The notes under the pieces are model-generated. The model saw only the letters and a program-made list of their open reading frames with translations, ran no database searches and was not told where the DNA came from. DNA of 63,059 nt, counting the filler, from Hyphochytrium catenoides (taxonomy: Eukaryota; Protista; Hyphochytriomycota), in NCBI GenBank assembly GCA_900088475.1. It is 12 parts of 12 records of this genome, joined end to end, with 100 filler letters (N's around TTAATTAATTAA, not from the genome) between each part and the next. Parts side by side here need not be neighbours in the genome. Positions count along the whole stretch, not along the records: positions 13,302 to 24,102 come from FLMG01000246.1; 11 more parts are not named here. One strand, written 5' to 3'. A program made the position numbers and the translations under genes. Each line of letters opens with the position of its first letter. Within the stretch, counting starts at the first letter, position 1. This document shows positions 13,195 to 25,145 of this stretch, piece by piece.

Positions 13195-14014
13195 GGGGGG
13201 GNNNNNNNNNNNNNNNNNNNNNNNNNNNNNNNNNNNNNNNNNNNNTTAATTAATTAANNNNNNNNNNNNNNNNNNNNNNNNNNNNNNNNNNNNNNNNNNN
13301 NAGAGAGAGAGGGAGAGAGAGGAGACGAGAAAGAGAGGAGAGGAGAGGAGACCAACGGACAGTGGGTTGGTAAGAGGGAGAGGAGGAGGAGGCAACTATC
13401 AGCTCTTCTAACGCCTGTGTCCTTTCCCGTACCGCGAGCCGCTAACGCCACCGAGCTGATCAAACATTCACAGAACCAATACTCGAAACATTATAATAGG
13501 TATCCCTCAACATTGAATCCGGCAATTGTGAAGGTAATTTCATGGCTGGACATTTGAGGAAGTGTGCATCTTCTCGGATGGCCTCTCTAAATAACGGGTC
13601 AGAGAAGGCTAGTTTCGGGCTTTGCATGGACATGTATGAGACAGACTGACCCATTGCGATGGTTTGACAATAACCGTAGCATCTAGCCATAGGGAAAGAC
13701 AGAGCAAGGATGATAGAGAGAGAAGAGAACGAGATGTGGAGAGCTGTGGACATTATAAGATCTGCGGCCGAGAAGAAGTCTCTCCAATTTGGGGAAGAAG
13801 TGTCTCCAACTCGAGGGGAAAGTGTTCCTACGTGTGTCATTGTGGCGAGTGAAAGGTTAAGCGTGTTTATGTTGCTTGTCTTCACAGCCTAGTACTAAGG
13901 ACAGGTTTGTCCGCCTGAGCCATCCTGTCTTTAGTGCCGACTTTCGCCATGTGTTGACGCTAAATATTATTTGTTGACGTTGATCCTTCGCTATTATTAT
14001 TCCGCATTCCGGCC

Positions 14015-15244
14015 TTATCGGGATGTGAGCTGGGCATTTGGACCCTCCTTCTGCCTCTTCTCTATAAGCCTTTTTGCTTGCACCTCTGCACTGAGGTAAC
14101 CTCTGTTCTCATAGCTGGTATAGTAAGGCAGATGCTTAGGCGGAGGACGTGCAAATCTGGGGATGATCTCAAACTTGTGAGGCTTGAGATGTGCGCGAAG
14201 GCCAAGTCTGTTGAAGTGAACCGTTGTAACAGAACCTCCAATGGCCTCTACAGCACTGATGGCCTCCTTAGAGGCACGAGTAACCTCAATCTTGATCGGT
14301 GTTCTTAGATGCTGCTTTCCCTGTAGAAAAAGAAGAGACGGGGTGAGACACAAGGGGTAGCTAGACATGAAGGGTCCTCAGGAGCTAACGTCTGACTGTT
14401 AGTAGGGCCACTACGCATATAAAGCACCAAACAACAGGTGCCAATTACCAAGGTCCTTCAAGAAGACCAGACTTTGACTTACGTTTGCGAGGAGCTTGAC
14501 TCCTTCTTTCACTCTGCCTATAATCTGTGAATCATGAATCTTCTTCATGGTAATCACCTCATCCGCGGGCAGTCGGCCCAAATCGATGAAAAGCTGAAGT
14601 TTGTCCAAGTTCAAAGGCTTCAGATCTTGCGAAAACCTAGTGATGGACTAAGGGAGTAAGCACTGATGATCGGAAAACCGTCCAAGAAGGCTAAGGAGGA
14701 CGGTTGAGCTAGAGCGACAGAATGGAAGAGATGAAGAAGCGTAATGCCATGCTGACGCCACGACATATGGAAGCCAATGACATCAAGAGCTACGACTCTC
14801 GGATTTTCCCGGTAATAACCGCTACTGTCTAAGCTGTGGCTTCTGAGATAAAAAGCTACTTACTTTCCAACAAAGCCTCGCTTGGGAATTCTCCGCCATA
14901 AGGGAGTTTGACCACCCTCAAATCTAAAGGCTCCAGGCCCAGACTTGCCACCCGATCTTGCCTTCTGGCCTTTGTGACCTCTTCCGGCAGTCTTGCCCTT
15001 TCCACTACCTGGACCTCTACCTAGTCGTTTGGCCTGCAAGACCCAGACGTCAGAGGAGCGTATCCAAAATCTCCAATGAAACGTGATCGTCCACTACCTT
15101 CTTCCTTGACCCCGGATTAGGCGCCAGAACATTAAGAGTGAGCGCGCCGACTGATCTGTAGGCCGTCGAAGTGAAAGCTCTAGCGAATGAGTTGGCGCCA
15201 TCTAGCTTCAAAGAAGCCAGGGACCTGACGAGAAGCGAGTTCAT
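14015..15244 (-). CDS. MRPL15: Mitochondrial ribosomal protein uL15m, 4 exons, complete
   Basis: Presequence-like N-terminus; [53 protein letters not shown]; GVKLLA; [19 protein letters not shown]; [11 protein letters not shown]. Confidence 0.95.
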
Positions 15245-15742
15245 AGCGTCCTAGACCTATTTATTAGGTGGTCAACCTCGCTATCTCTCTGCCCTGCCCT
15301 TCGTCTTCCAGATGATAATGAGCGCCCGCTCAATCTCAATGAAGACCCGTTCAGATCTCTTTGTTAGCGCAATGTAGGAAGCTTCATCAAGAACTCAGCA
15401 CCACTGAACCAACCCCAATACTGAGCAAACTGATCAAATAAACGACAGCTCATCGATAATCGGACAGTCAGTAATCGATAAATGGAACATACTTGTCTAC
15501 AGGAGCCATTCCTGTATTTGGAGGATATACTAATATGGATGAGAATGTGGTCCTTCCGTGGAGGGGATGTGCATTGCTTTGTCGAGTCTGCCTTTTCCCC
15601 CAAAAGGTCCCTAAACAGAGGTTTATGGGGTATCGTATGGTCCGCAAAAGCAGGTTAGGTTACTACAGCGTTTGTACACAGAGAGAATGGAAGAGAAAAG
15701 GCAGAGAGAGAGGAGGGACAGAGAGAGGGAGAGAGAGATAGA

Positions 15743-15784
<42 letters not shown>

Positions 15785-16041
15785 TAGATAGAGAGAGAGA
15801 GAGCGAGAAAGAGGAGAGAAAGGGACAGAGAGAGAAAGGGACAAAGAGAGAGAGAGGGAGGAGAGAAAGAGAGACAGAAACCGCAAGGAAGAGTGAGAGG
15901 AGCGTCCAGCATGACATGGTGACAGTACAGTAGGGTCCAGGAAGTAGAGAAGGGAAACATCCGAATCTCTTCCTCTTTGCTCTCTCTCTCCTTCTGCAGG
16001 TCGTCTGACCATCTGACCTACCTGCCCTCCTCGTCTTACTG

Positions 16042-16098
<57 letters not shown>

Positions 16099-16457
16099 TC
16101 TGGCCGTTCCTCCTTCAAAAGTTTGGTCACAGTGCGGACATTAGACGGTTGGGGCCATAGAAACAAGAAGAAAGGGCAGTCACGCTGTTGGGCCTTTAGT
16201 TCCCAAAGGAAGATCCTGTCTCTATCTTTTTGCAGTGGAAGAGAGACGCGCATCTCCGACAAGCGGGGAGAGAGAGAGAGAGACACGCACACGAGAGAGA
16301 CTCTGAAATAACCGCGGGAAGAAGATAGAGAGAAGTGCCATCACCTCTAGGAGAAGAGGCGGCAGGTTTTTCCATGGTTAAGAGATGAGAACGCTGTCTC
16401 TCTCTGTCCGCTGCACCTGAACGTGCTTGCCTTGGCCATCCTTCCGCGCCTCACTGC

Positions 16458-19400
16458 ATGACTGAAGGGGAGAAGATGGACGGGATGATCAGAGGGAAGC
16501 TCTTCAAGCGGAGCGACTATCTCCATGTAAATGTGTTCTTGGACGACAGAGTGTCTCTTCCCTTCTTTTTTTATTTGTCTTCTCAAATGCACTTTTCCAT
16601 CCCAGCATCACTGCACTCCGTCCTCTTTTTCCCATTCCCTACTCTCTCTTCTCTCTTTCTCTCTCTCTNNNNNNNNNNNNNNNNNNNNNNNNNNNNNNNN
16701 NNNNNNNNNNNNNNNNNNNNNNNNNNNNNNNNNNNNNNNTTTTTTTTCCCTCTCTGGCACCCACACATAGTTTCCGTCTTCTGACCTTCTCTCCCCATGT
16801 CCTCACATGCCAGAGATGGCGAACAAGAACCTTTGAGATAGACCTTAGCCTCTTGGTGAAGACCCTGCGGTACTATGACCAGCACAATAAACTGCGAGGA
16901 GAGGTGAGTGCCTCACGGAAAGCTCGGAACAGAAAAGAGAGAGAGAGGATGGAAAAGGGAGAGAGCAAGAGAGACGCAGAGTGATAATGCGTATGCGCGA
17001 GAGAAAGAGAATGTGTGCGTGTACGAGAAGAAGAGAGCGAGAGAGAGAGAGAGAGAGTCCCGACGATAGTGATCTCACTTGGAGAAAGGGAAGGGAAACA
17101 GAGAAGATCCTACTTTAAGAGCTGAGCAGCGTAGGCACACAGAGAGAGAGAGAGAGAGAGATCGCTGGGGAATAGATGTCCCTCCGAGGACGCACACTGA
17201 GAGAGACGGCGATAAAAAGGTTGTAAGGCTGAGTCCACATCACCTTCATTCTCTGCAGTTCATTCTTAGCGGCACGCGTTGCACTATTGAGCTTCTGGAC
17301 GCCTCTCTGGTTGGCAAGCCTCATGGTATGATGCTGCGTGCCTCGCTGATCCTTTTCTCTTTCTCCTCTCTTCTGTTCTCTTCTTCTCTTCTCTAGAGGT
17401 CTGCCATCTCCTGCCAATCCACCAGATAAATCTTAAGCAGTGCGTTGCGCCTCGCCTCCAATCTTCCTGTCTCCTTTCATCTTCTCTTAGTTAGCTGTTT
17501 TCTCCCTGACGAAGAGCTCACAAGGTCCGCTCTCGCTCTTTCTCTCTTTCCTGTCTGACTGTTTAGCCTTCCGTCTCGCCTCTGAGGCCAAGGAGATGAT
17601 CATGGCTGCAGGCTCAGAACCCTCTATGAGGAAATGGATTGACTACCTTGAGAGAAGTGGTGCAACACTGTTGGTAAGCGGTGACCCTTTCTGTCTACTC
17701 TCTCTCTCCTTTACTTTCTTTGGCCTCCAGTAGGCATGCTAACTCCTTCTTCCTTGCCGCTATAATCTCTCTCTTCTCCTCTCTCTTTCTCTCTCACTTT
17801 GCCTCTTTCTCTCTTCATCTCTCCTTTTATTATTGCTGTTAGGGCTCTCGCATGGAACAGCAGCTGTGGAAATCTGTGGCTTTAGAGGAGCAGAGACTAG
17901 CAGAACAACAAAGACTCGCGCAAGCTCAAGACCTATCTTCTAGGTCTATCAAGTCTTCAGACGTGTCCTCGCTCTCTAGCGGATCAGAGAGAACGTTTCT
18001 TTCCTCAGATCGAGGCTCGCTCCCTCTTACGGCGTATGATAGTGAAAGGACGTCGCATGAACCTGGTGTCAGACCGCATAGCAGTGAATGGTAGGAGATG
18101 TGGAGATGAGAATCGGTGACGTCCCCCGAGTCCTTCCTCACTTCTCTCTCTCTCCGAGCGTTTTTCTCTCTTGCACCACGTCTTCTCTGACTCACTTCTT
18201 CGCTTCGTCGTTCTCTTGCCGTCTCTTTGGTTAGCTCTAGAGAGTCTGAGGAAGACATGGAGGCAGAAGAGGCGGAGGAATCTTTAGATATCCCTTCGGA
18301 GTCTTCCATGCGGCTTATGCCTCTCAGAGTGGAGCCAGAGCCTAGTGCTGCCCTTTATTGCGGGAACTGCATGTATCCCTCAGTGTTCACTGCCTTGGGA
18401 TACAGAGCCTTACAGGTGAGAAGATGGTCCTGCGCGTACAGAAAGAAAGAGAGAGGAAAAGGGAGTGTGAGAAGGGATGAGATTCGTCCTCAAGGGCTTC
18501 TACGTTTTTGTGTCTTGTTCTATACGCCAACCGAGATGGGACCTGTCATACCAGCTTCGTACTCTCTCTTCCTCCTCCTGCTCAAATGTGTGAAAAGCTC
18601 AATACCTTTACCAGCTTCTGCTCCAGAGCTCCCTGTCTGCCATCCTGTTTCTCAGGCATTCGAAGCCTCACACAGGAGCTAACCCTCCCTGTTTCTCGTG
18701 TCGACGGCGGCCTGCCTCTTTCGCTGTCTCTCAATCTCTTATGTCTCGTCTCGACGAAGCGTCATCGCAGCTCCAAGGAGCTACTCGCCTCACGGTACCA
18801 CGACACGGCTATCACACCTCTCGCCCGCCAGTTGGACGAGGTAACAGAGGAGATTCACAGAAAGATCTTAGAGATGGGACTGGAAAAGATTCCCCTTCCC
18901 AATGCGCGGGCTGCGGCCCAGTGCCACGTTCTGCTCTCTCAGCATCTCAGCAGCTATGATAAGCTCTGTGTATTTATTGGAAGCTCTCACAGCGGTGCGC
19001 ATTGCCTCAGAGATGACCGTTTCTCTCTTTCGCCTCTGCACGCTTAGAAACCACTCATCTTCTTTGAGATCTCTACTCGCTCTCTCTGTGTCTTAACCAG
19101 CTGCTTTGATTTAAAGCCGACACTCTCTATGGGACACTCGTTTCTGCCTCCTCTTTGACCTTACTTCTAGTTTGCGCTATTTTTCTTTCTCTGCCACCAA
19201 TTGCAATTCCTCTGTCGCCAGGTGCAAAACTCTGACGAAAGCTAGACCTTAACGTTGCAGCGCTTTGTCTCCTCCTTTCGACCACCCCCATCTAAGTTTA
19301 GTCTCTATCCTAACTCTATTCCGACTCTCTTGCTCCAGGCGGCCTGGGTGTGCCTCCCGGTGTCTGGAGTCGAACGGCCTGTACAACGTTGGGAATAGAG

Positions 19401-21304
19401 AACGGCTCGATGATCTCATATATTGCAAAGGCACAGGAGCATGGTCGGAGTCCTTTTCTTCTTCTTGTCGTGTTCTCTCCCGGTCGAGTTCTTTTTCAAA
19501 GTCCATCTGCTATGCTTCTCTCTCTCTTACCACTTTCCGTTCTTGCTCTAGGATGGGGCACCTATCTTTCCTTTGCTGGCATGAACTCTCCATTGCTCTA
19601 CATAGTTGAATCTCACCACGATTTCCTTTATCCTCTCCGTTGCACCTTGCTAAATATTCTTTTAACCCTTGGCGCCTTCTCGTTTTCTTCATCAGAGTTT
19701 GGCTGCATTGTGCTCGATCCCGCGACGCACAGCATCTTTGCGGATGTCAATGGGACTGTACAGAAGGTGATGGTGAGTTATTTTATTTAGCCTGCTAGTC
19801 GTACGCGAATTAGCAAAGCGTATAGAGTAACAGGTCAGGTCAATAGAAGATGGACAGAGAGAGAGAGAAGGAAAGAGATGAAAGACAACAAAGTATAGAA
19901 TCATCCATAAGATTTAGACGACAAAGAAAGAGTATGATAAATCATCCCGACAGTTAACTTCAAAGTGTACCGCGGTTGACGGAGTCATATTTTCAAGGTG
20001 GAAGGCTCTGAGACTTCCGAGAAGCACATTGCGACCGCCTGGGAACGTTTTGTGGGACCGTCGGCGGCCGACAGCGTCTTTGTTATCGCTTATGGACTGG
20101 GCGGAGAGTCCTTTAAGGTAAGCGATAAGAAGATGCCAGGCGGGAAAAGCAGGACGCAGAGAGAAAGAAAAGGTGTAGAGCAGAGTGCGAAGGCTTTATC
20201 AGCTCTCTTATTGGTAACGAAGACGGCTCCTCACCTACAGTACGGCTGTGGTGCTGGAAAGGCGAGAGAGAGGCGGCCAGGACGGGCTCAGACGATTCTG
20301 TCTCATTTCATCGCTCTGTAGGACTATTTAGAGGCCAACCCCCACGTGCTGTCGAGCGCCAAGGGGCCGAGATTACAGGCTGTGAACTTCATTGGTAGCT
20401 CTTCATAGCTCTTTGCCATCTTGAGGCTGCGGCTACTGTCTCTCACTCCCCCCTCTCTCTCCGCATTCCTCTCTTTCCCCTCTTTCGTTGTACCCCGTAC
20501 TCTCTTTCTCCTCCTTTTCTTTTTCTTTCTCTTGTACTCCCTCTCTTACTTCTTGTCTACCCCTTTCTCCCCTCTCTTTGCCTCTGACTCCTCTCTCCAT
20601 CGACCCTTAATTTGTGCTGCTGCGTGTAATGGGCAGAAGTGAGGTGTTCACTCCATCTTGCCAGCCTCAGTCTCTGAAGCCCACGATATTCTCATTCTGA
20701 CACTCTTCTTCTCCTGGCAATCAGACTCTCCCCATAAGATCGATGCATCCACACATTTCGCTGTGCGGAAGTTCTTCGGTAGACGAGCCATCAATTGGCA
20801 AGAAGATAAGAAAGCGGCCTTTGGTGCGCAGCTACCTATTGAGATAGAGGATCAGAAGGGTACGCCTCTCCTCTGAGTTGTCTTCATTATCATGGATCGC
20901 TTGCGGTTTCTTGCCCTGCGCTGCGCTCCCTCATTGCTCCATCGACGTAGTGGAGGCCAACCTTCTTGCTCCCTTCTTTATTATTAGAAATCCATGGTCT
21001 TCCTTCTTTGGGAGTCTACGACCTCTCTCACCCCATGGTCCCGTTCCTCCCTCTATCTCAAGCGGTCATCCTTCGTCTTTGGTCTAAATCTCTTTGCATA
21101 GGTTGCGTCTGCATATCTGCAGGCCGTCAGCGGGATGGCTCAAATGGCTCAAATCGAGCGTGGCTGATCCCTGTCGTCAAGGACGCAGCTTTCCGGTACT
21201 TTGAGTTTTGCCTTGACATTGACTGCTACCAAGACGAGGGAAGCAGCGTCAGTGAGAGATTTGCAAAGTTAGAAAGTAGGACCGGTATGTCGGGCGGGTG
21301 GTAG
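16458..21304 (+). CDS. PH domain + Ser/Glu-rich linker + Arb2/FAM172A-like alpha/beta-hydrolase-fold domain, about 13 exons
   Basis: PH: GKLFKRSDYLH-RWRTRTFEI..LRYYD..KLRGE-FIL..HAFRL..MAAGSEPSMRKWIDYL. Arb2/FAM172A-like: KLCVFIG..PPGVWSR..GIENGSMISYIAKA..FGCIVLDP, SEKHIATAWERFV..SVFVIAYGLGG, AVNFIDSPH, AINW, CISAG. Splice phases are consistent, with one ambiguous junction at about 18415-18760. Confidence 0.8.
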
Positions 21305-21668
21305 GAGAGGTGGGCGCATGTATATGTGTGACTGATTGAGAAAGAGATAAAGGGGAAGAGGAGAAGGGACAAGAGAGACAGCGGAAAGAGGCAGAGTTAA
21401 GAGAAATGGATGTTCAAGAAAGAGTGAGAGCGAGAAATGGAGAACGATTGCACTTTGAAGACGTCATGCTCTCTCTATAAAACCCTTTAATTGCAACATT
21501 GTAGACAGCATATGGACGTTTGTTCTATCATAATCTCCTCATGTCAACAAGCACTCCTCAAGAGAGCGAGCAAGAAACTGCTTGGTGAGCAGGAAAATGC
21601 CCTCTGTTAGGCTCGCTACCTCCCTGGAGTCTCTCTGGGTGACCATCTACCCTCGACAGGAACTAGGA

Positions 21669-23059
21669 TCACACATTATCAGTAGAGCGGCTTCCTCTCC
21701 TTAATGATCTAAGTGTAAGATCTCCATCCTGACCAGCAGGATTTCTCTTCTTTGTCTCCAGTTGCACCAAGCGCGCACAACCAACATGCCCATTCCTCTC
21801 TGCTAGCTGCAGGCAGGTCTCATCCTACAAAATCCAATGGTCAGTCAAATGTATGAAAGTCCACGATAAGAGAGAGAGGGCCATATAATGCCTGAGGTCC
21901 CTTTCCCGTCCTATCCTATCTCCTCAACCTTCTCCATATGCCAACGCCGTTTCTCCATGCTCTCGGCGTTCGAGACTCCGTCCAACCTCCTTTCCTACCT
22001 TGGTGTTGTTAATGAATGGGTTTGCATTCTTGTCTAGCAGAAGCTTTACGCAGAGTCCGTGGCCATTCTGGCAGGCGAGGTGCAGAGGGGTGTTGCCGTC
22101 GTTATCTTGAAGGTTAAGATCCGCCCCGGCTTCCGCAATCATCCTAGGCAGAGCAACAGAGTGTGAGAGTGACAAAGGGCTAAAACCATCACGTTCGGTA
22201 GGCAGAGCAAGCTCTGACCGCCAGCAGCGGTGTATGCGTCACATAGTGGGATATGACGCAAGATAGAGGAAGAGTGCTCCCCAAAGAAAGAACTGAACGA
22301 CAAACCAAGGAAAACAATTCCTAGCAAATCACGAGTGTTTCGGCTCTCTCTCTCATTCTCTCTCTCTCTCTTTTGTCTGGTGTCTTGTTCTCCCCTCATT
22401 CCTTCTCTTGCTGACCTAATGGCGTCACCGTGGCCCCCTTTCGCTGCATAATGTATGGCTGTCATCCCGGTGCGGCTGTCCTTTCCATCAATGTTGATGC
22501 TGACGCCCTCTAGCCATCGCCGAAGTATTTTGACATTTCCTTCCTCGGCTGCACTCTTGACAAAACCGAGGAGTGCAGTAGAGGAGGCGTGGTCATGGCT
22601 CTCTGCGCTCGGAAGCAGCAGAGTGTTAGACAATCTGACATTGCATCGTCCATCGCCTTCTCTTACTCTTCCTTGTCCATTCCAAGCTGTCGTCCTCACT
22701 CACTCTCGCTAGACAGCCTGCCTATTGATTCTGATACTCGCACTATTTAAGAGTTGTCATCCCCCCTCGCCGTCACAATAACAGCGCACCGCTAGTTCCG
22801 CAGAGCTTTATCTATTCAAACCACAGCAATCCTTGCCTCATGCTCATCGTCATCCTCGCGTCTTCCTCCTTGTTGTGAACCTAATACCCGTGAAGACAGT
22901 GTAAGAGCGCATACCTGCGGTTCCTGTGCTTTTATTGGAGCCCCTGCGCAGCACTGTCTTGGAGCCTGATCCCGACGTTAAGCTGATAATCAGCAAGAAG
23001 ACAAGCGCTGCAATTCCCGCCAACAATACCAGTACTGCGACTGGATGCAAGCCCCACAT
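21669..23059 (-). CDS. Small ankyrin-repeat protein with N-terminal TM/signal anchor, 4 exons
   Basis: MWGLHPVAVLVLLAGIAALVFLLIISL; AAEEGNVKILR; GMTAIHYAAKGGHGDAIR; GNTPLHLACQNGHGLCVKLLL; ETCLQLAERNGHVGCARLV. Confidence 0.85.
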
Positions 23060-23668
23060 GGCGGATGAGGGCGCTACAGCGTAATAAATAAAGGCAAGGA
23101 GCCACCGAAGACTGTGGAGCAACGTTGTGGCCGAGTCTTTCCACGACACTTGAGACCTCGAAGCCTAGAAGAGAGCTTGCTAAAGGGAGACTATTGAGGG
23201 ACTCAAATCGCTTGAGCGCGACGGCCAAAGAGTTAGCGACGCTATGAGAAGAGCACCAGAATGGCGATGAAGAATCTCCAGAAATGCCCGCAGACACAGC
23301 GTAGGAAGGTCTACAGATCTGGCGCTTGGCGCTGCGTTTCTCTGTAAGGATATCATAGCACTATCTTTCTCCTCTCGATTCCTGATCTGAGTCAAAGCAT
23401 CACAGAGGCTCCTGTATCGGTAAATGCCTACGTACAGTAGGGACGGTTTCCAGCTGCTTATCCTTCGTTCCGAATAATCATTACACATATGAGGTATAGT
23501 GTCAGTTGAAGGTTGTGAGCGACAACGGGAAGCATCGTACTGCGCTGTACAACATGTACGCGCAGCTCCAAGGGGAGTACTGCAACCGCTGGTTTATAGC
23601 AGTCACAGAGCCGATCAGAATCCTTCCCAAGAGACATCAAGAACCAGGAAGCAGGTCTCCGCTATCAC

Positions 23669-23735
<67 letters not shown>

Positions 23736-25145
23736 TGTATGGAGGGAGGGACGACATGGTCGGAAGGTCACACCCAGAAGGTGAGATTTCCATGTTGGCT
23801 TGGCAGTTGAAAACCTTCGGCCGCACCCATACCGGTTGCCTCCTCCAATTCTATTCAAGCCTTTCTCTCTCTCTCTCTGCTGCTGTCTCTCTTCACAGCT
23901 CTGCCACCGGCCTATCCTCCTTGTCAGGCTCGGATTTTTGCCGCGCTGGATGACTTTCACAGCGGCCAGACTACCTTGACCTGGCTCCATTGAGCCTCTC
24001 AGAATGGGTAGAGGCAAGCAGCAGGTAAGCTACAGAGCATGTTTCTCTGACTTTGTCTCTCTATCTCAGCTATTAGCTCTTCCTACTCTCCCTACATACC
24101 TTNNNNNNNNNNNNNNNNNNNNNNNNNNNNNNNNNNNNNNNNNNNNTTAATTAATTAANNNNNNNNNNNNNNNNNNNNNNNNNNNNNNNNNNNNNNNNNN
24201 NNTCTCTCTCTCTCTCTCCCTCTCTCTCTCTAGGCCAAACCAAGCTTGAGTTTGAAGGAAAAGATAATGATGCAGAGGAAACAGATGCAGCAAGCCCAAT
24301 CCACATCAGGAGGAGGCGGGGCCGTCCTTCTTGTCACTTGAGACGCACCGTCTCTCTCTGTTCTCTTTGAAGTTCTGCTCTGCTTGTCTCTCTCTCTCTC
24401 TCTCTCTCTCTTTTCATCCTGTCTCTCCTTCCATACGTCCCTGAGTGTCTCTATTGAAAGAGAGAAAAGCTCCTCTCTTGCTCTCTCTTTCTCTCTTTAT
24501 TCCCTCTCTCTCTCTCTCTTCACTTTTAATCTATTAAAGCGATGAGCTGAAGTGGTCTTCGCTACTGGAGAGAGGGAATTGGGGAGAGAGAAGACAGGAT
24601 GTGCAGTTGTTCAGGTGATCAAGGTGTATAATGAATAACGCTTTCATGGCAAGAGTTCAGCTTGGCACCCTCTCTCTCTCTCTCTCTCTCTTCGTCTCTT
24701 CCTCCCTTCGTAAGGTCCATCAAAGCCAGGTATAGCCTTTGTCTCTATCCTCCGTCACTGCACGAAGCGCAAGCGACGAAAGAGAAGAACCAGGAGAAAA
24801 AAGAGAGAGAGAGAGAGAAATGCTGACGGTGGAGGACGGAGGAGATGACTCTTTGGCAAGGGAGAGGAGGAGAGAGAGAGAGAGAGACGAAGGACCAACA
24901 AGCTTTTCTCCTCAACCTCTGTCAATTTCAGTGTTATTGCACATTAGTAAAGAATACTGACGCTTACCGAAAATAATATCTGTGAATTAGTGCAATATTG
25001 TCATTTATGCAAGAAAAATCCGCTTACATTCGGTTATTTTTGCCTTATTTTTTGAAAGGAGCTGCCAAATCTTAGGATAGTTGACTTTTTGGTGATGGAG
25101 AAGGAGGATTGTCCTTCGAAAGGGTACGGAAACGCATCGCTGCAG

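What the first reader, a model, noticed from the sequence alone, without database searches (positions are those of the whole stretch)
16458..21304. PH domain fused to an Arb2/FAM172A (Argonaute-binding family) domain
Seen: about 13 GT-AG exons splice in phase into one protein running PH domain, acidic Ser-rich linker, FAM172A-like domain. The nucleophile-elbow position reads AYGLGG rather than FAM172A's AHSYGG, so the Ser is absent. Known: Arb2 domains occur in S. pombe Arb2 (ARC complex), the Hda1/Clr3 C-terminus and animal FAM172A (AGO2-linked). I do not know of a described PH-Arb2 architecture. Inference: a non-catalytic adaptor that could tie Argonaute or chromatin silencing to phosphoinositide membranes.
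Basis: partly seen in the sequence, partly recalled or inferred. Interest (0 to 1): 0.7.

Follow-up and report, generated by a model that had tools for sequence, protein, structure and literature searches.

The report
PH-like–Arb2 fusion protein gene
This is a real 13-exon gene for a protein that joins a small PH-like targeting module to an Arb2/FAM172A-type domain lacking its catalytic serine; the combination recurs in three unannotated relatives, I found no description of it, and its function is untested.

Summary
The gene is real. Thirteen GT..AG exons (16458-21304, + strand) join in phase into 569 codons plus a stop. The N gap lies in intron 1 and hides no coding sequence that homology can detect.

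Exons 7, 8 and 10 hit Pfam Arb2 (PF22749) colinearly. Three relatives from metagenome or SRA contigs (L001, L004, L005) pass the Arb2 cut-off outright at 52-64 bits. In those relatives the C-terminal helix of the N-terminal module, the linker and the first half of Arb2 sit in one uninterrupted ORF, so the fusion does not depend on my splicing model.

All four proteins read AYG[LI]GGE, with Gly where a hydrolase nucleophile would be.

The PH assignment rests on hallmark motifs and one weak exon hit (13.2 bits). The joined protein was not sent to any search or folding tool, by operator rule.

Both are in frame.

No RNA run was listed, no annotated homologue was found, and no paper describes PH plus Arb2. 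The function (a non-catalytic targeting scaffold) is inferred, and the Argonaute link is speculation.

This is a new architecture of a known domain family, of moderate interest.

The parts
16458..16526 (+). Exon 1: start codon and first strand of the PH-like module (G-x-L-x-K-R). The relatives start at the position of the Met at 16485.
   Evidence: tblastn with the L005 first exon: 79% identity, E 1.8e-5. Donor cat|GTAAAT.
16527..16813 (+). Intron 1, which contains the assembly gap (N 16669-16739), with pyrimidine (CT/T) runs on both sides.
   Evidence: GT..AG. Phase-0 intron at the same position in L001 (48 nt) and L005 (44 nt). No residue is missing between E1 and E2 compared with the relatives.
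16814..16903 (+). Exon 2: W-R-T-R-T-F basic motif and L-R-Y-Y strand of the PH-like module.
   Evidence: 67% identity to L005, E 2.4e-13. Alignment A4.
17259..17325 (+). Exon 3: middle strands of the PH-like module.
   Evidence: 59% identity to L005. Alignment A4.
17567..17673 (+). Exon 4: last strands and C-terminal helix of the PH-like module, with the conserved Trp (RKWID, 17629-17643).
   Evidence: Pfam PH PF00169 positions 79-103 of 105, E 0.13. 51-54% identity to relatives.
17843..18090 (+). Exon 5: start of the linker (EQQLWKSV, conserved), then a Ser-rich stretch.
   Evidence: In L001 and L005 the matching residues follow the PH helix in the same ORF. Composition.
18235..18415 (+). Exon 6: acidic Ser-rich linker. 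Not conserved in sequence.
   Evidence: In phase, donor cag|GTGAGA. No Pfam hit.
18760..18994 (+). The acceptor at 18832 is more likely. It would remove 24 residues that have no homology support.
   Evidence: Arb2 profile positions 44-98 start at residue 26 of this exon. tblastn matches start at 18820-18832. Acceptor scores are -1.1 at 18760 and 8.8 at 18832.
19339..19443 (+). Exon 8: Arb2 (GLGVPPGVWSR...).
   Evidence: Arb2 positions 101-128, E 0.0035. 58-62% identity to relatives.
19696..19772 (+). Exon 9: Arb2 strand (FGCIVLDPATH).
   Evidence: 50-54% identity to relatives. Alignments A6 and A7.
19998..20117 (+). Exon 10: Arb2 helix, strand and elbow. AYGLGG is at 20088-20105, with Gly in the nucleophile position.
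   Evidence: Arb2 positions 170-207, E 1.2e-4. 65% identity to relatives. In the model of the L005 homologue this is strand, then Gly, then helix, at pLDDT 64-71.
20322..20394 (+). Exon 11: Arb2.
   Evidence: 41-45% identity to relatives, weak on its own. Tiles colinearly in A7.
20725..20859 (+). Exon 12: conserved [DE]-x-x-H motif (DSPH; the D codon is split between 20394 and 20725-20726, and H is at 20733-20735).
   Evidence: 37-44% identity to relatives. The motif is present in all four proteins.
21102..21304 (+). Exon 13: family-specific C-terminal extension beyond the Pfam Arb2 model (GCxC...SAG...NRAW...FC.D[IV]D), ending in stop TAG 21302-21304.
   Evidence: 43-48% identity, E down to 1.4e-17. 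In L001 the Arb2 profile ends about 75 residues before the C-terminus.
21700..22573 (-). Neighbouring ankyrin-repeat gene, tail to tail. The same pairing occurs in relatives L001 and L005.
   Evidence: tblastn with the L001 and L005 Ank proteins, E down to 2.9e-14, colinear. Pfam Ank hits. Gene order in L001 and L005.

Best explanation
A single 13-exon gene encodes a protein of about 545-569 aa with four parts:
- an N-terminal PH-like module of about 100 residues;
- a disordered acidic, Ser-rich linker of about 140-165 residues;
- an Arb2 domain (alpha/beta-hydrolase-like fold) whose nucleophile position is Gly;
- a conserved Cys-containing C-terminal extension.

Shown: the gene structure, the Arb2 homology, the missing nucleophile, and the same fusion in three other organisms.

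Inferred: the protein is a non-catalytic scaffold. The PH-like module would place it on a membrane lipid or a protein partner. The Arb2 domain would act as a protein-binding or dimerising module, as in Hda1/Clr3 and FAM172A. The flexible, possibly phosphorylated linker would sit between the two. Which partner it binds (Argonaute, histones or something else) is unknown.
For: Gene model:
- All introns are GT..AG, phases agree, and there is a single terminal stop.
- 11 of 13 exons match relatives colinearly.

The fusion does not depend on splicing:
- In L001 (ORF 6599-7465 = P0003) and L005 (ORF 6588-7160 = P0005), the PH C-helix, the linker and the first part of Arb2 are one uninterrupted ORF.
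- L004 has the same exon order.

Arb2:
- Three window exons hit PF22749 colinearly, with a rough sum of 51.7 bits.
- Relatives reach 64.2, 57.5 and 52.6 bits against a cut-off of 26.8, and Arb2 is the only Pfam family they reach above its cut-off.
- A low-confidence model of the L005 C-terminal half puts the two solved Arb2 domains, Clr3 5ikk (Z 4.8) and Hda1 5j8j (Z 4.3), plus many esterases in the top rows of 48,161 chains.

No nucleophile:
- AYG[LI]GGE in all four proteins.
- In the model this is strand, then Gly, then helix.

PH-like module:
- G-x-L-x-K-R ... W-[KR]-T-R-T-F ... L-R-Y-[YF] ... and a C-terminal helix with an invariant Trp (A4, A5).
- Pfam PH hits that helix at profile positions 79-103 of 105.
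- The module is 51-79% identical across the family.

What Arb2 domains are known to do: dimerise and bind histones or AGO2 (PMC5036196, PMC10205598).
Against: - No RNA evidence: no run was listed.
- The PH assignment is below Pfam's cut-off on single exons. Other pieces give nothing against Pfam or PDB sequences. The joined domain was not tested.
- Both structure models are poor (pLDDT 48.8 and 49.9). Foldseek on the first found nothing. The VIA Z-scores are in the range the tool itself calls a common arrangement.
- An HG-type loop (SH[GS]GG in three of four proteins; the fourth is cut by an intron) and a [DE]-x-x-H motif (all four) are conserved, so some residual chemistry is not excluded.
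- No binding or localisation data of any kind.
Confidence: 0.6

Rival explanations
1. The N-terminal module has a PH-like fold but is a protein-binding module rather than a phosphoinositide binder. Many PH-superfamily domains behave this way. The protein would then be a soluble adaptor and not membrane-targeted.
For: Only a weak Pfam PH match, and none for the other pieces. No lipid data. From general knowledge, most PH domains bind lipids weakly or not at all.
Against: A basic K-x(n)-[KR]-x-R pattern between the first two strands is conserved in all four proteins (GKLFKRSDYLHRWRTRTF in the window). From general knowledge, that pattern goes with phosphoinositide binding.
Confidence: 0.25
2. 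The Arb2 domain is still an enzyme that uses another nucleophile, for example the residue five positions after the elbow Gly. That residue is Cys in the three relatives and Ser in the window (GGE[CS]FK).
For: The Cys/Ser swap at one column. The SH[GS]GG loop (three of four proteins) and the [DE]-x-x-H motif (all four) are conserved.
Against: The model puts that residue inside the helix after the elbow, not at the strand-helix turn (moderate pLDDT). The residue two positions after it is Lys, which would be unusual for a nucleophile elbow. The solved Hda1 Arb2 domain is described as non-catalytic, with a disrupted pocket (PMC5036196).
Confidence: 0.08
3. In this genome the PH-like exons and the Arb2 exons are two separate genes or transcripts, or the model is wrong in the non-conserved exons 5-7.
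For: Exons 5 (after its first residues) and 6 have no sequence homology support. The E6/E7 junction is ambiguous. No RNA data.
Against: The start of E5 (EQQLWKSV) matches the residues that directly follow the PH helix inside one ORF in L001 and L005. E4 ends at a donor with no in-frame stop. No alternative start or stop pattern is conserved. The fusion is present in three relatives.
Confidence: 0.06

Closest known systems
Animal FAM172A (Arb2-domain protein, AGO2 and CHD7 partner)
   Same: Arb2 domain as the main globular part, and the same Pfam family.
   Different: FAM172A has no PH-like module. Its Arb2 domain is split by a bipartite NLS (PMC10205598), and no basic cluster of that kind is in the window protein. 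FAM172A keeps Ser at the elbow (recollection), whereas this family has Gly. This family has its own Cys-containing C-terminal extension.
Arb2 domains of the histone deacetylases Hda1 (S. cerevisiae, 5j8j) and Clr3 (S. pombe, 5ikk)
   Same: Same Pfam family. Alpha/beta-hydrolase-like fold without catalysis (PMC5036196). Both appear in the top 8 of 48,161 chains for the weak model of the L005 homologue.
   Different: Those are C-terminal appendages of a deacetylase and dimerise through a protruding arm. Here the partner domain is PH-like. No sequence-level match to either chain.
S. pombe Arb2 of the ARC complex (Argonaute siRNA chaperone)
   Same: It gave the domain family its name.
   Different: It is a single-domain protein. 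Argonaute binding there is experimental, and here it is untested.
Phytophthora Arb2-AGC kinase fusions (PITG_06776)
   Same: A precedent for an Arb2 domain fused to a signalling module in a protist (PMC3019232).
   Different: The partner there is a protein kinase, not a PH-like module. That paper reports no orthologue in apicomplexans, ciliates or diatoms.

Membership tests
Arb2 domain (Pfam PF22749) | Profile match above the curated cut-off (26.8 bits) | tested here: met
   Relatives pass on single ORFs: 64.2 bits (P0002), 57.5 (L001:7381-7890) and 52.6 (L005:7396-8022). Window exons are each below the cut-off (12.5, 17.2, 22.0 bits) but colinear at profile positions 44-98, 101-128 and 170-207, with a rough sum of 51.7. 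They are 35-65% identical to those relatives. The joined window protein was not scanned.
Arb2 domain (Pfam PF22749) | Alpha/beta-hydrolase-like sandwich fold | tested here: inconclusive
   Models have pLDDT 48.8 and 49.9. Foldseek found nothing. VIA-align top rows include Clr3 5ikk (Z 4.8), Hda1 5j8j (Z 4.3) and several esterases, all under the Z value the tool regards as specific.
Arb2 domain (Pfam PF22749) | Dimerisation, or binding of histones or Argonaute | not testable with these tools
   Needs biochemistry.
FAM172A orthologue | Ser at the G-x-S-x-G-type elbow | tested here: not met
   AYGLGG in the window and AYG[LI]GG in the relatives. The FAM172A motif itself comes from recollection.
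FAM172A orthologue | Bipartite NLS splitting the Arb2 domain (PMC10205598) | tested here: not met
   A regular-expression scan of the model found no basic cluster.
PH domain (Pfam PF00169) | Profile match above the curated cut-off (25.1 bits) | tested here: inconclusive
   Only exon 4 matches: 13.2 bits, E 0.13, profile positions 79-103 of 105. The other exons and the relatives' pieces give nothing. The domain is split by introns in all four loci, and the joined sequence was not searched, by operator rule.
PH domain (Pfam PF00169) | Invariant Trp in the C-terminal helix, and a G-x-L-x-K ... W-x-x-R-x-F ... L-x-Y-Y strand pattern | tested here: met
   RKWID at aa 97-101 and GKLFKRSDYLHRWRTRTF at aa 13-30. 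Both are conserved in A4 and A5. The pattern itself is taken from general knowledge of PH domains.
PH domain (Pfam PF00169) | Seven-stranded beta-sandwich capped by a helix | not testable with these tools
   No contiguous reference covers the module in any locus.
Active alpha/beta serine hydrolase | Nucleophile (Ser, Cys or Asp) at the strand-turn-helix elbow | tested here: not met
   Gly at that position in all four proteins. Strand E66-72, then Gly73, then helix H74-85 in the L005 model.

The most novel reading that the evidence does not exclude
A lineage-restricted family of PH-like plus Arb2 pseudo-hydrolase adaptors, so far seen only in this genome and three unannotated contigs. It keeps its ankyrin-repeat neighbour in two of the three relatives. 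It would recruit an Arb2 partner, such as an Argonaute or a chromatin factor, to a phosphoinositide-marked membrane. That would be a link between lipid signalling and small-RNA or chromatin machinery not described for any Arb2 protein.
Probability: 0.12. Interest if true: 0.75.

Novelty: new variant of a known kind. Interest (0 to 1): 0.45.

Why it matters
Arb2 domains are poorly understood. They are known as an Argonaute partner in fission yeast, as a dimerising, histone-binding appendage of Hda1/Clr3, and as the core of FAM172A, a protein linked to CHARGE syndrome.

A conserved family that couples a nucleophile-less Arb2 domain to a PH-like targeting module would show that the fold is reused as a binding module outside the nucleus or at membranes. 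It would also give a simple system for asking what Arb2 domains bind.

The family also shows that unannotated protist genomes hold conserved architectures that are missing from the protein databases I could search.

Tried and rejected
- RNA evidence: the look-up of sequencing runs listed no run.
- Homologue searches:
  - phmmer with exon 7 against 1.84 billion representatives gave two real hits, both unannotated ORF fragments, plus two repeat or coiled-coil artefacts, P0001 and P0004.
  - Three word-indexed searches returned only fragments of the same three relatives.
  - Their length window is 0.55-1.75 times a query of at most 289 aa, so annotated full-length proteins above about 505 aa could not be seen.
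  - A tiled alignment did not widen the window, because the tool uses the length of the first row.
- Two scans of JGI metagenomes found no relative. A first attempt failed because the alignment had no conserved stretch.
- ESM Atlas: no usable hit for P0003, and only sub-threshold MORN rows for a 51-aa piece.
- PDB by sequence: nothing for exon 7, P0002 or profiles A3, A4, A5 and A8.
- Structure: both predictions were poor because the alignment holds only four species and no ORF covers a whole domain. Foldseek was blank.
- Organism:
  - Exact look-up of a window ORF found nothing.
  - Rfam gave only low-complexity noise.
  - Accession strings are in no relevant paper.
  - Extending the L005 contig showed no lineage-specific family.
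  - My impression that the window is coccidian-like, from its CT/GA-rich introns, is untested.
- The 2018 PNAS paper on FAM172A is not held, so the FAM172A elbow motif rests on recollection.
- It was assembled only inside scripts, to check frame, length, composition and motif positions.
Full report
**Scope.**
- I worked only on places 13302-24102.
- Exons and relatives' ORFs were given by reference.
- The exons were joined only inside scripts, to check frame, length, composition and motif positions.

**Gene model.**
- Reading the sequence and its frames gives 13 exons on the + strand: 16458-16526, 16814-16903, 17259-17325, 17567-17673, 17843-18090, 18235-18415, 18760-18994, 19339-19443, 19696-19772, 19998-20117, 20322-20394, 20725-20859 and 21102-21304.
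- All twelve introns are GT..AG and 144-355 nt long. Phases agree. The join is 1710 nt with a single terminal stop, giving 569 aa.
- Minus-strand ORFs across the region are few and at most 127 aa.

**The gap.**
- N 16669-16739 lies inside intron 1 (16527-16813), so the frame does not have to carry across it.
- E1 matches the first exon of relative L005 (79% identity, E 1.8e-5). E2 matches the next exon (67%, E 2.4e-13). Both are in the same order and on the same strand.
- L001 and L005 have a phase-0 GT..AG intron (48 and 44 nt) at exactly this point, after ...YLH. No residue is missing between the two exons.
- The gap therefore hides no coding sequence that homology can detect. Whether the scaffold join is physically right cannot be tested here, but the gene's order and orientation argue that it is.

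**Arb2 half.**
- Scanned exon by exon, E7, E8 and E10 hit Pfam Arb2 (PF22749) at profile positions 44-98, 101-128 and 170-207, with 12.5, 17.2 and 22.0 bits. Each is below the 26.8-bit cut-off, but they are colinear and roughly sum to 51.7 bits.
- phmmer with E7 against 1.84 billion representatives found only two true relatives, P0002 and P0003. A later search added P0005.
- These are ORF fragments on unannotated contigs: L001-L003 (ENA ERZ23491423, ERZ23491220; Logan ERR4674102), L004 (ERZ27293425) and L005 (Logan SRR27418475). The contigs have 36-43% GC and very short introns.
- Their pieces pass the Arb2 cut-off outright at 64.2, 57.5 and 52.6 bits, and Arb2 is the only Pfam family they reach above its cut-off.
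- The window's exons E7-E13 tile onto them colinearly at 35-65% identity.
- The last 75 or so residues (E13) lie beyond the Pfam model but are conserved in the family: GCxC...SAG...NRAW...FC.D[IV]D.

**The fusion.**
- All three relatives have the same order: MMRGKLLKRS.YLH, TWKTRTFELD...LRY[YF]D...KLKGE, ILNGKRC...GKPH, FAL...MSAGSDSAMRKWIDFL..NGA.L, then EQQELWRSV, an acidic Ser-rich stretch, then Arb2.
- In L001 (ORF 6599-7465) and L005 (ORF 6588-7160), the C-terminal helix of the N-terminal module, the whole linker and the first part of Arb2 are one uninterrupted ORF. The fusion in the family therefore does not depend on any splice prediction.
- In the window, E5 begins GSRMEQQLWKSV. This matches the residues that follow the helix in those ORFs, which supports the E4-E5 join.
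- E5 (after its first residues) and E6 are not conserved in sequence. Their composition is like the relatives' linkers: 18% Ser, 16% Asp+Glu, net charge -8.

**The E6/E7 junction.**
- On a weight matrix built from the other 11 acceptors, 18760 scores -1.1 and 18832 scores 8.8. Leave-one-out scores of the true sites run from -2.3 to 10.3.
- Both acceptors are in frame with donor 18416.
- Homology and the Pfam match begin only at about 18820-18835.
- I therefore favour 18832, which gives 545 aa and drops 24 residues. Only cDNA can decide.

**PH-like half.**
- Residues about 10-111 show the strand pattern expected of a PH domain (general knowledge): G-x-L-x-K-R, W-R-T-R-T-F, L-R-Y-Y, G-x-I-L, F-R-L, and a C-terminal helix with an invariant Trp (RKWID). 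Between the first two strands there is a basic K-x(n)-[KR]-x-R pattern.
- The module is 51-79% identical across the four proteins.
- Pfam PH hits only E4, at profile positions 79-103 of 105, where the helix should be (E 0.13, 13.2 bits).
- Other pieces, and profiles of pieces against PDB sequences, gave nothing.
- The module is cut by introns in all four loci, so it could not be scanned or folded whole. I put a PH-like fold at about 85% and lipid binding well below that.

**Catalytic residues and fold.**
- The elbow reads AYGLGG in the window (20088-20105) and AYG[LI]GG in the relatives.
- A model of the L005 C-terminal half is poor overall (pLDDT 49.9) but reaches 63-77 over residues 21-100. 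There it shows strand CLFAIAY, then Gly, then helix LGGECFKEYLES, which is the geometry of a nucleophile elbow with Gly at the apex.
- Aligned against 48,161 PDB representatives, its top rows include a YdeN-like hydrolase (Z 5.0), the Arb2 region of Clr3 (5ikk, Z 4.8), Hda1 Arb2 (5j8j, Z 4.3) and many esterases. These Z values are in the range the tool warns may reflect only a common arrangement, so this is weak but consistent support.
- Two loops are conserved and unexplained: SH[GS]GG (not recoverable in L005, where an intron cuts it) and [DE]-x-x-H (all four). So is a Cys/Ser alternation five residues after the elbow Gly.

**Mechanism.**
- Solved Arb2 domains are alpha/beta-hydrolase-like, non-catalytic, and act by dimerising and binding histones (PMC5036196).
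- FAM172A binds AGO2 and can homodimerise (PMC10205598).
- The most likely reading is a non-catalytic scaffold. The N-terminal module sets the location, the Arb2 domain binds a partner or dimerises, and a flexible acidic linker lies between them.
- The partner is unknown, and the Argonaute or chromatin idea is speculation.

**Novelty.**
- Full-text searches for 'Arb2 domain' with 'PH domain' or 'pleckstrin homology' return only the Phytophthora kinome paper. That paper describes Arb2-AGC kinase fusions, not PH-Arb2.
- No paper links Arb2 to coccidia.
- No annotated homologue appeared in any protein search, and JGI metagenomes hold no relative.
- Limits: the word-indexed searches could not see proteins above about 505 aa, the one unrestricted search used a poorly conserved exon, and InterPro could not be queried.

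**Context.**
- Upstream on the minus strand is an organellar-type ribosomal protein L15 gene.
- Downstream, tail to tail, is an ankyrin-repeat gene orthologous to the one near the PH-Arb2 gene in L001 and L005.
- The source organisms of the window and of the relatives were not identified.

**Verdict.** This is a new architecture of a known family, of moderate interest.

Noticed in passing
window 14018-15250 (-): Multi-exon gene for a bacterial-type (organellar) ribosomal protein L15. Two ORF pieces hit PF00828 at 30.1 and 33.5 bits, and a Gly/Lys-rich N-terminal piece lies at 14863-15093.
   Followed up: partly
window 21700-22573 (-); L001 8594-9004 (-); L005 8904-9323 (-): An ankyrin-repeat gene lies tail to tail with the PH-Arb2 gene in the window and in two relatives. 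tblastn E is down to 2.9e-14 and the matches are colinear. The conserved pairing could mean a functional link.
   Followed up: partly
L001 7903-8256 (-); L005 8233-8817 (-): A 4HBT thioesterase gene sits between the Arb2 and Ank genes in both relatives. tblastn did not find it in the window.
   Followed up: partly
window 22853-23164 (-); L001 9082-9387 (-); L005 9344-9514 (-): Beyond the Ank gene, the window and two relatives each have an ORF with one hydrophobic segment. L001 and the window share an H-P-[LV]-A-V start by eye. tblastn was not significant, so a third syntenic gene is only a possibility.
   Followed up: no
L001 3404-6134 (+); L002 1153-7782 (+): In one relative, a PX-domain gene lies directly upstream of the PH-Arb2 gene, preceded by two or three tandem single-exon GH17 glucanase genes. 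Single-exon GH17 genes are known in Toxoplasma and Eimeria (PMC3518913), but this does not identify the organism.
   Followed up: partly
window 15703-15878, 16043-16096, 23669-23733: Long (AG)n and (CT)n microsatellites. They cause spurious sub-threshold Rfam hits to snR86 and MIR408. The assembly gap at 16669-16739 is flanked by pyrimidine runs (a CT-dinucleotide run upstream, a T run then CT-rich sequence downstream), which may be why the assembly broke there.
   Followed up: yes
window 20106-20111; relatives in A7 columns 303-304: The residue five positions after the elbow Gly is Ser in the window and Cys in all three relatives (GGE[CS]FK). Both can act as nucleophiles. The weak model places this residue inside the following helix.
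   Followed up: partly
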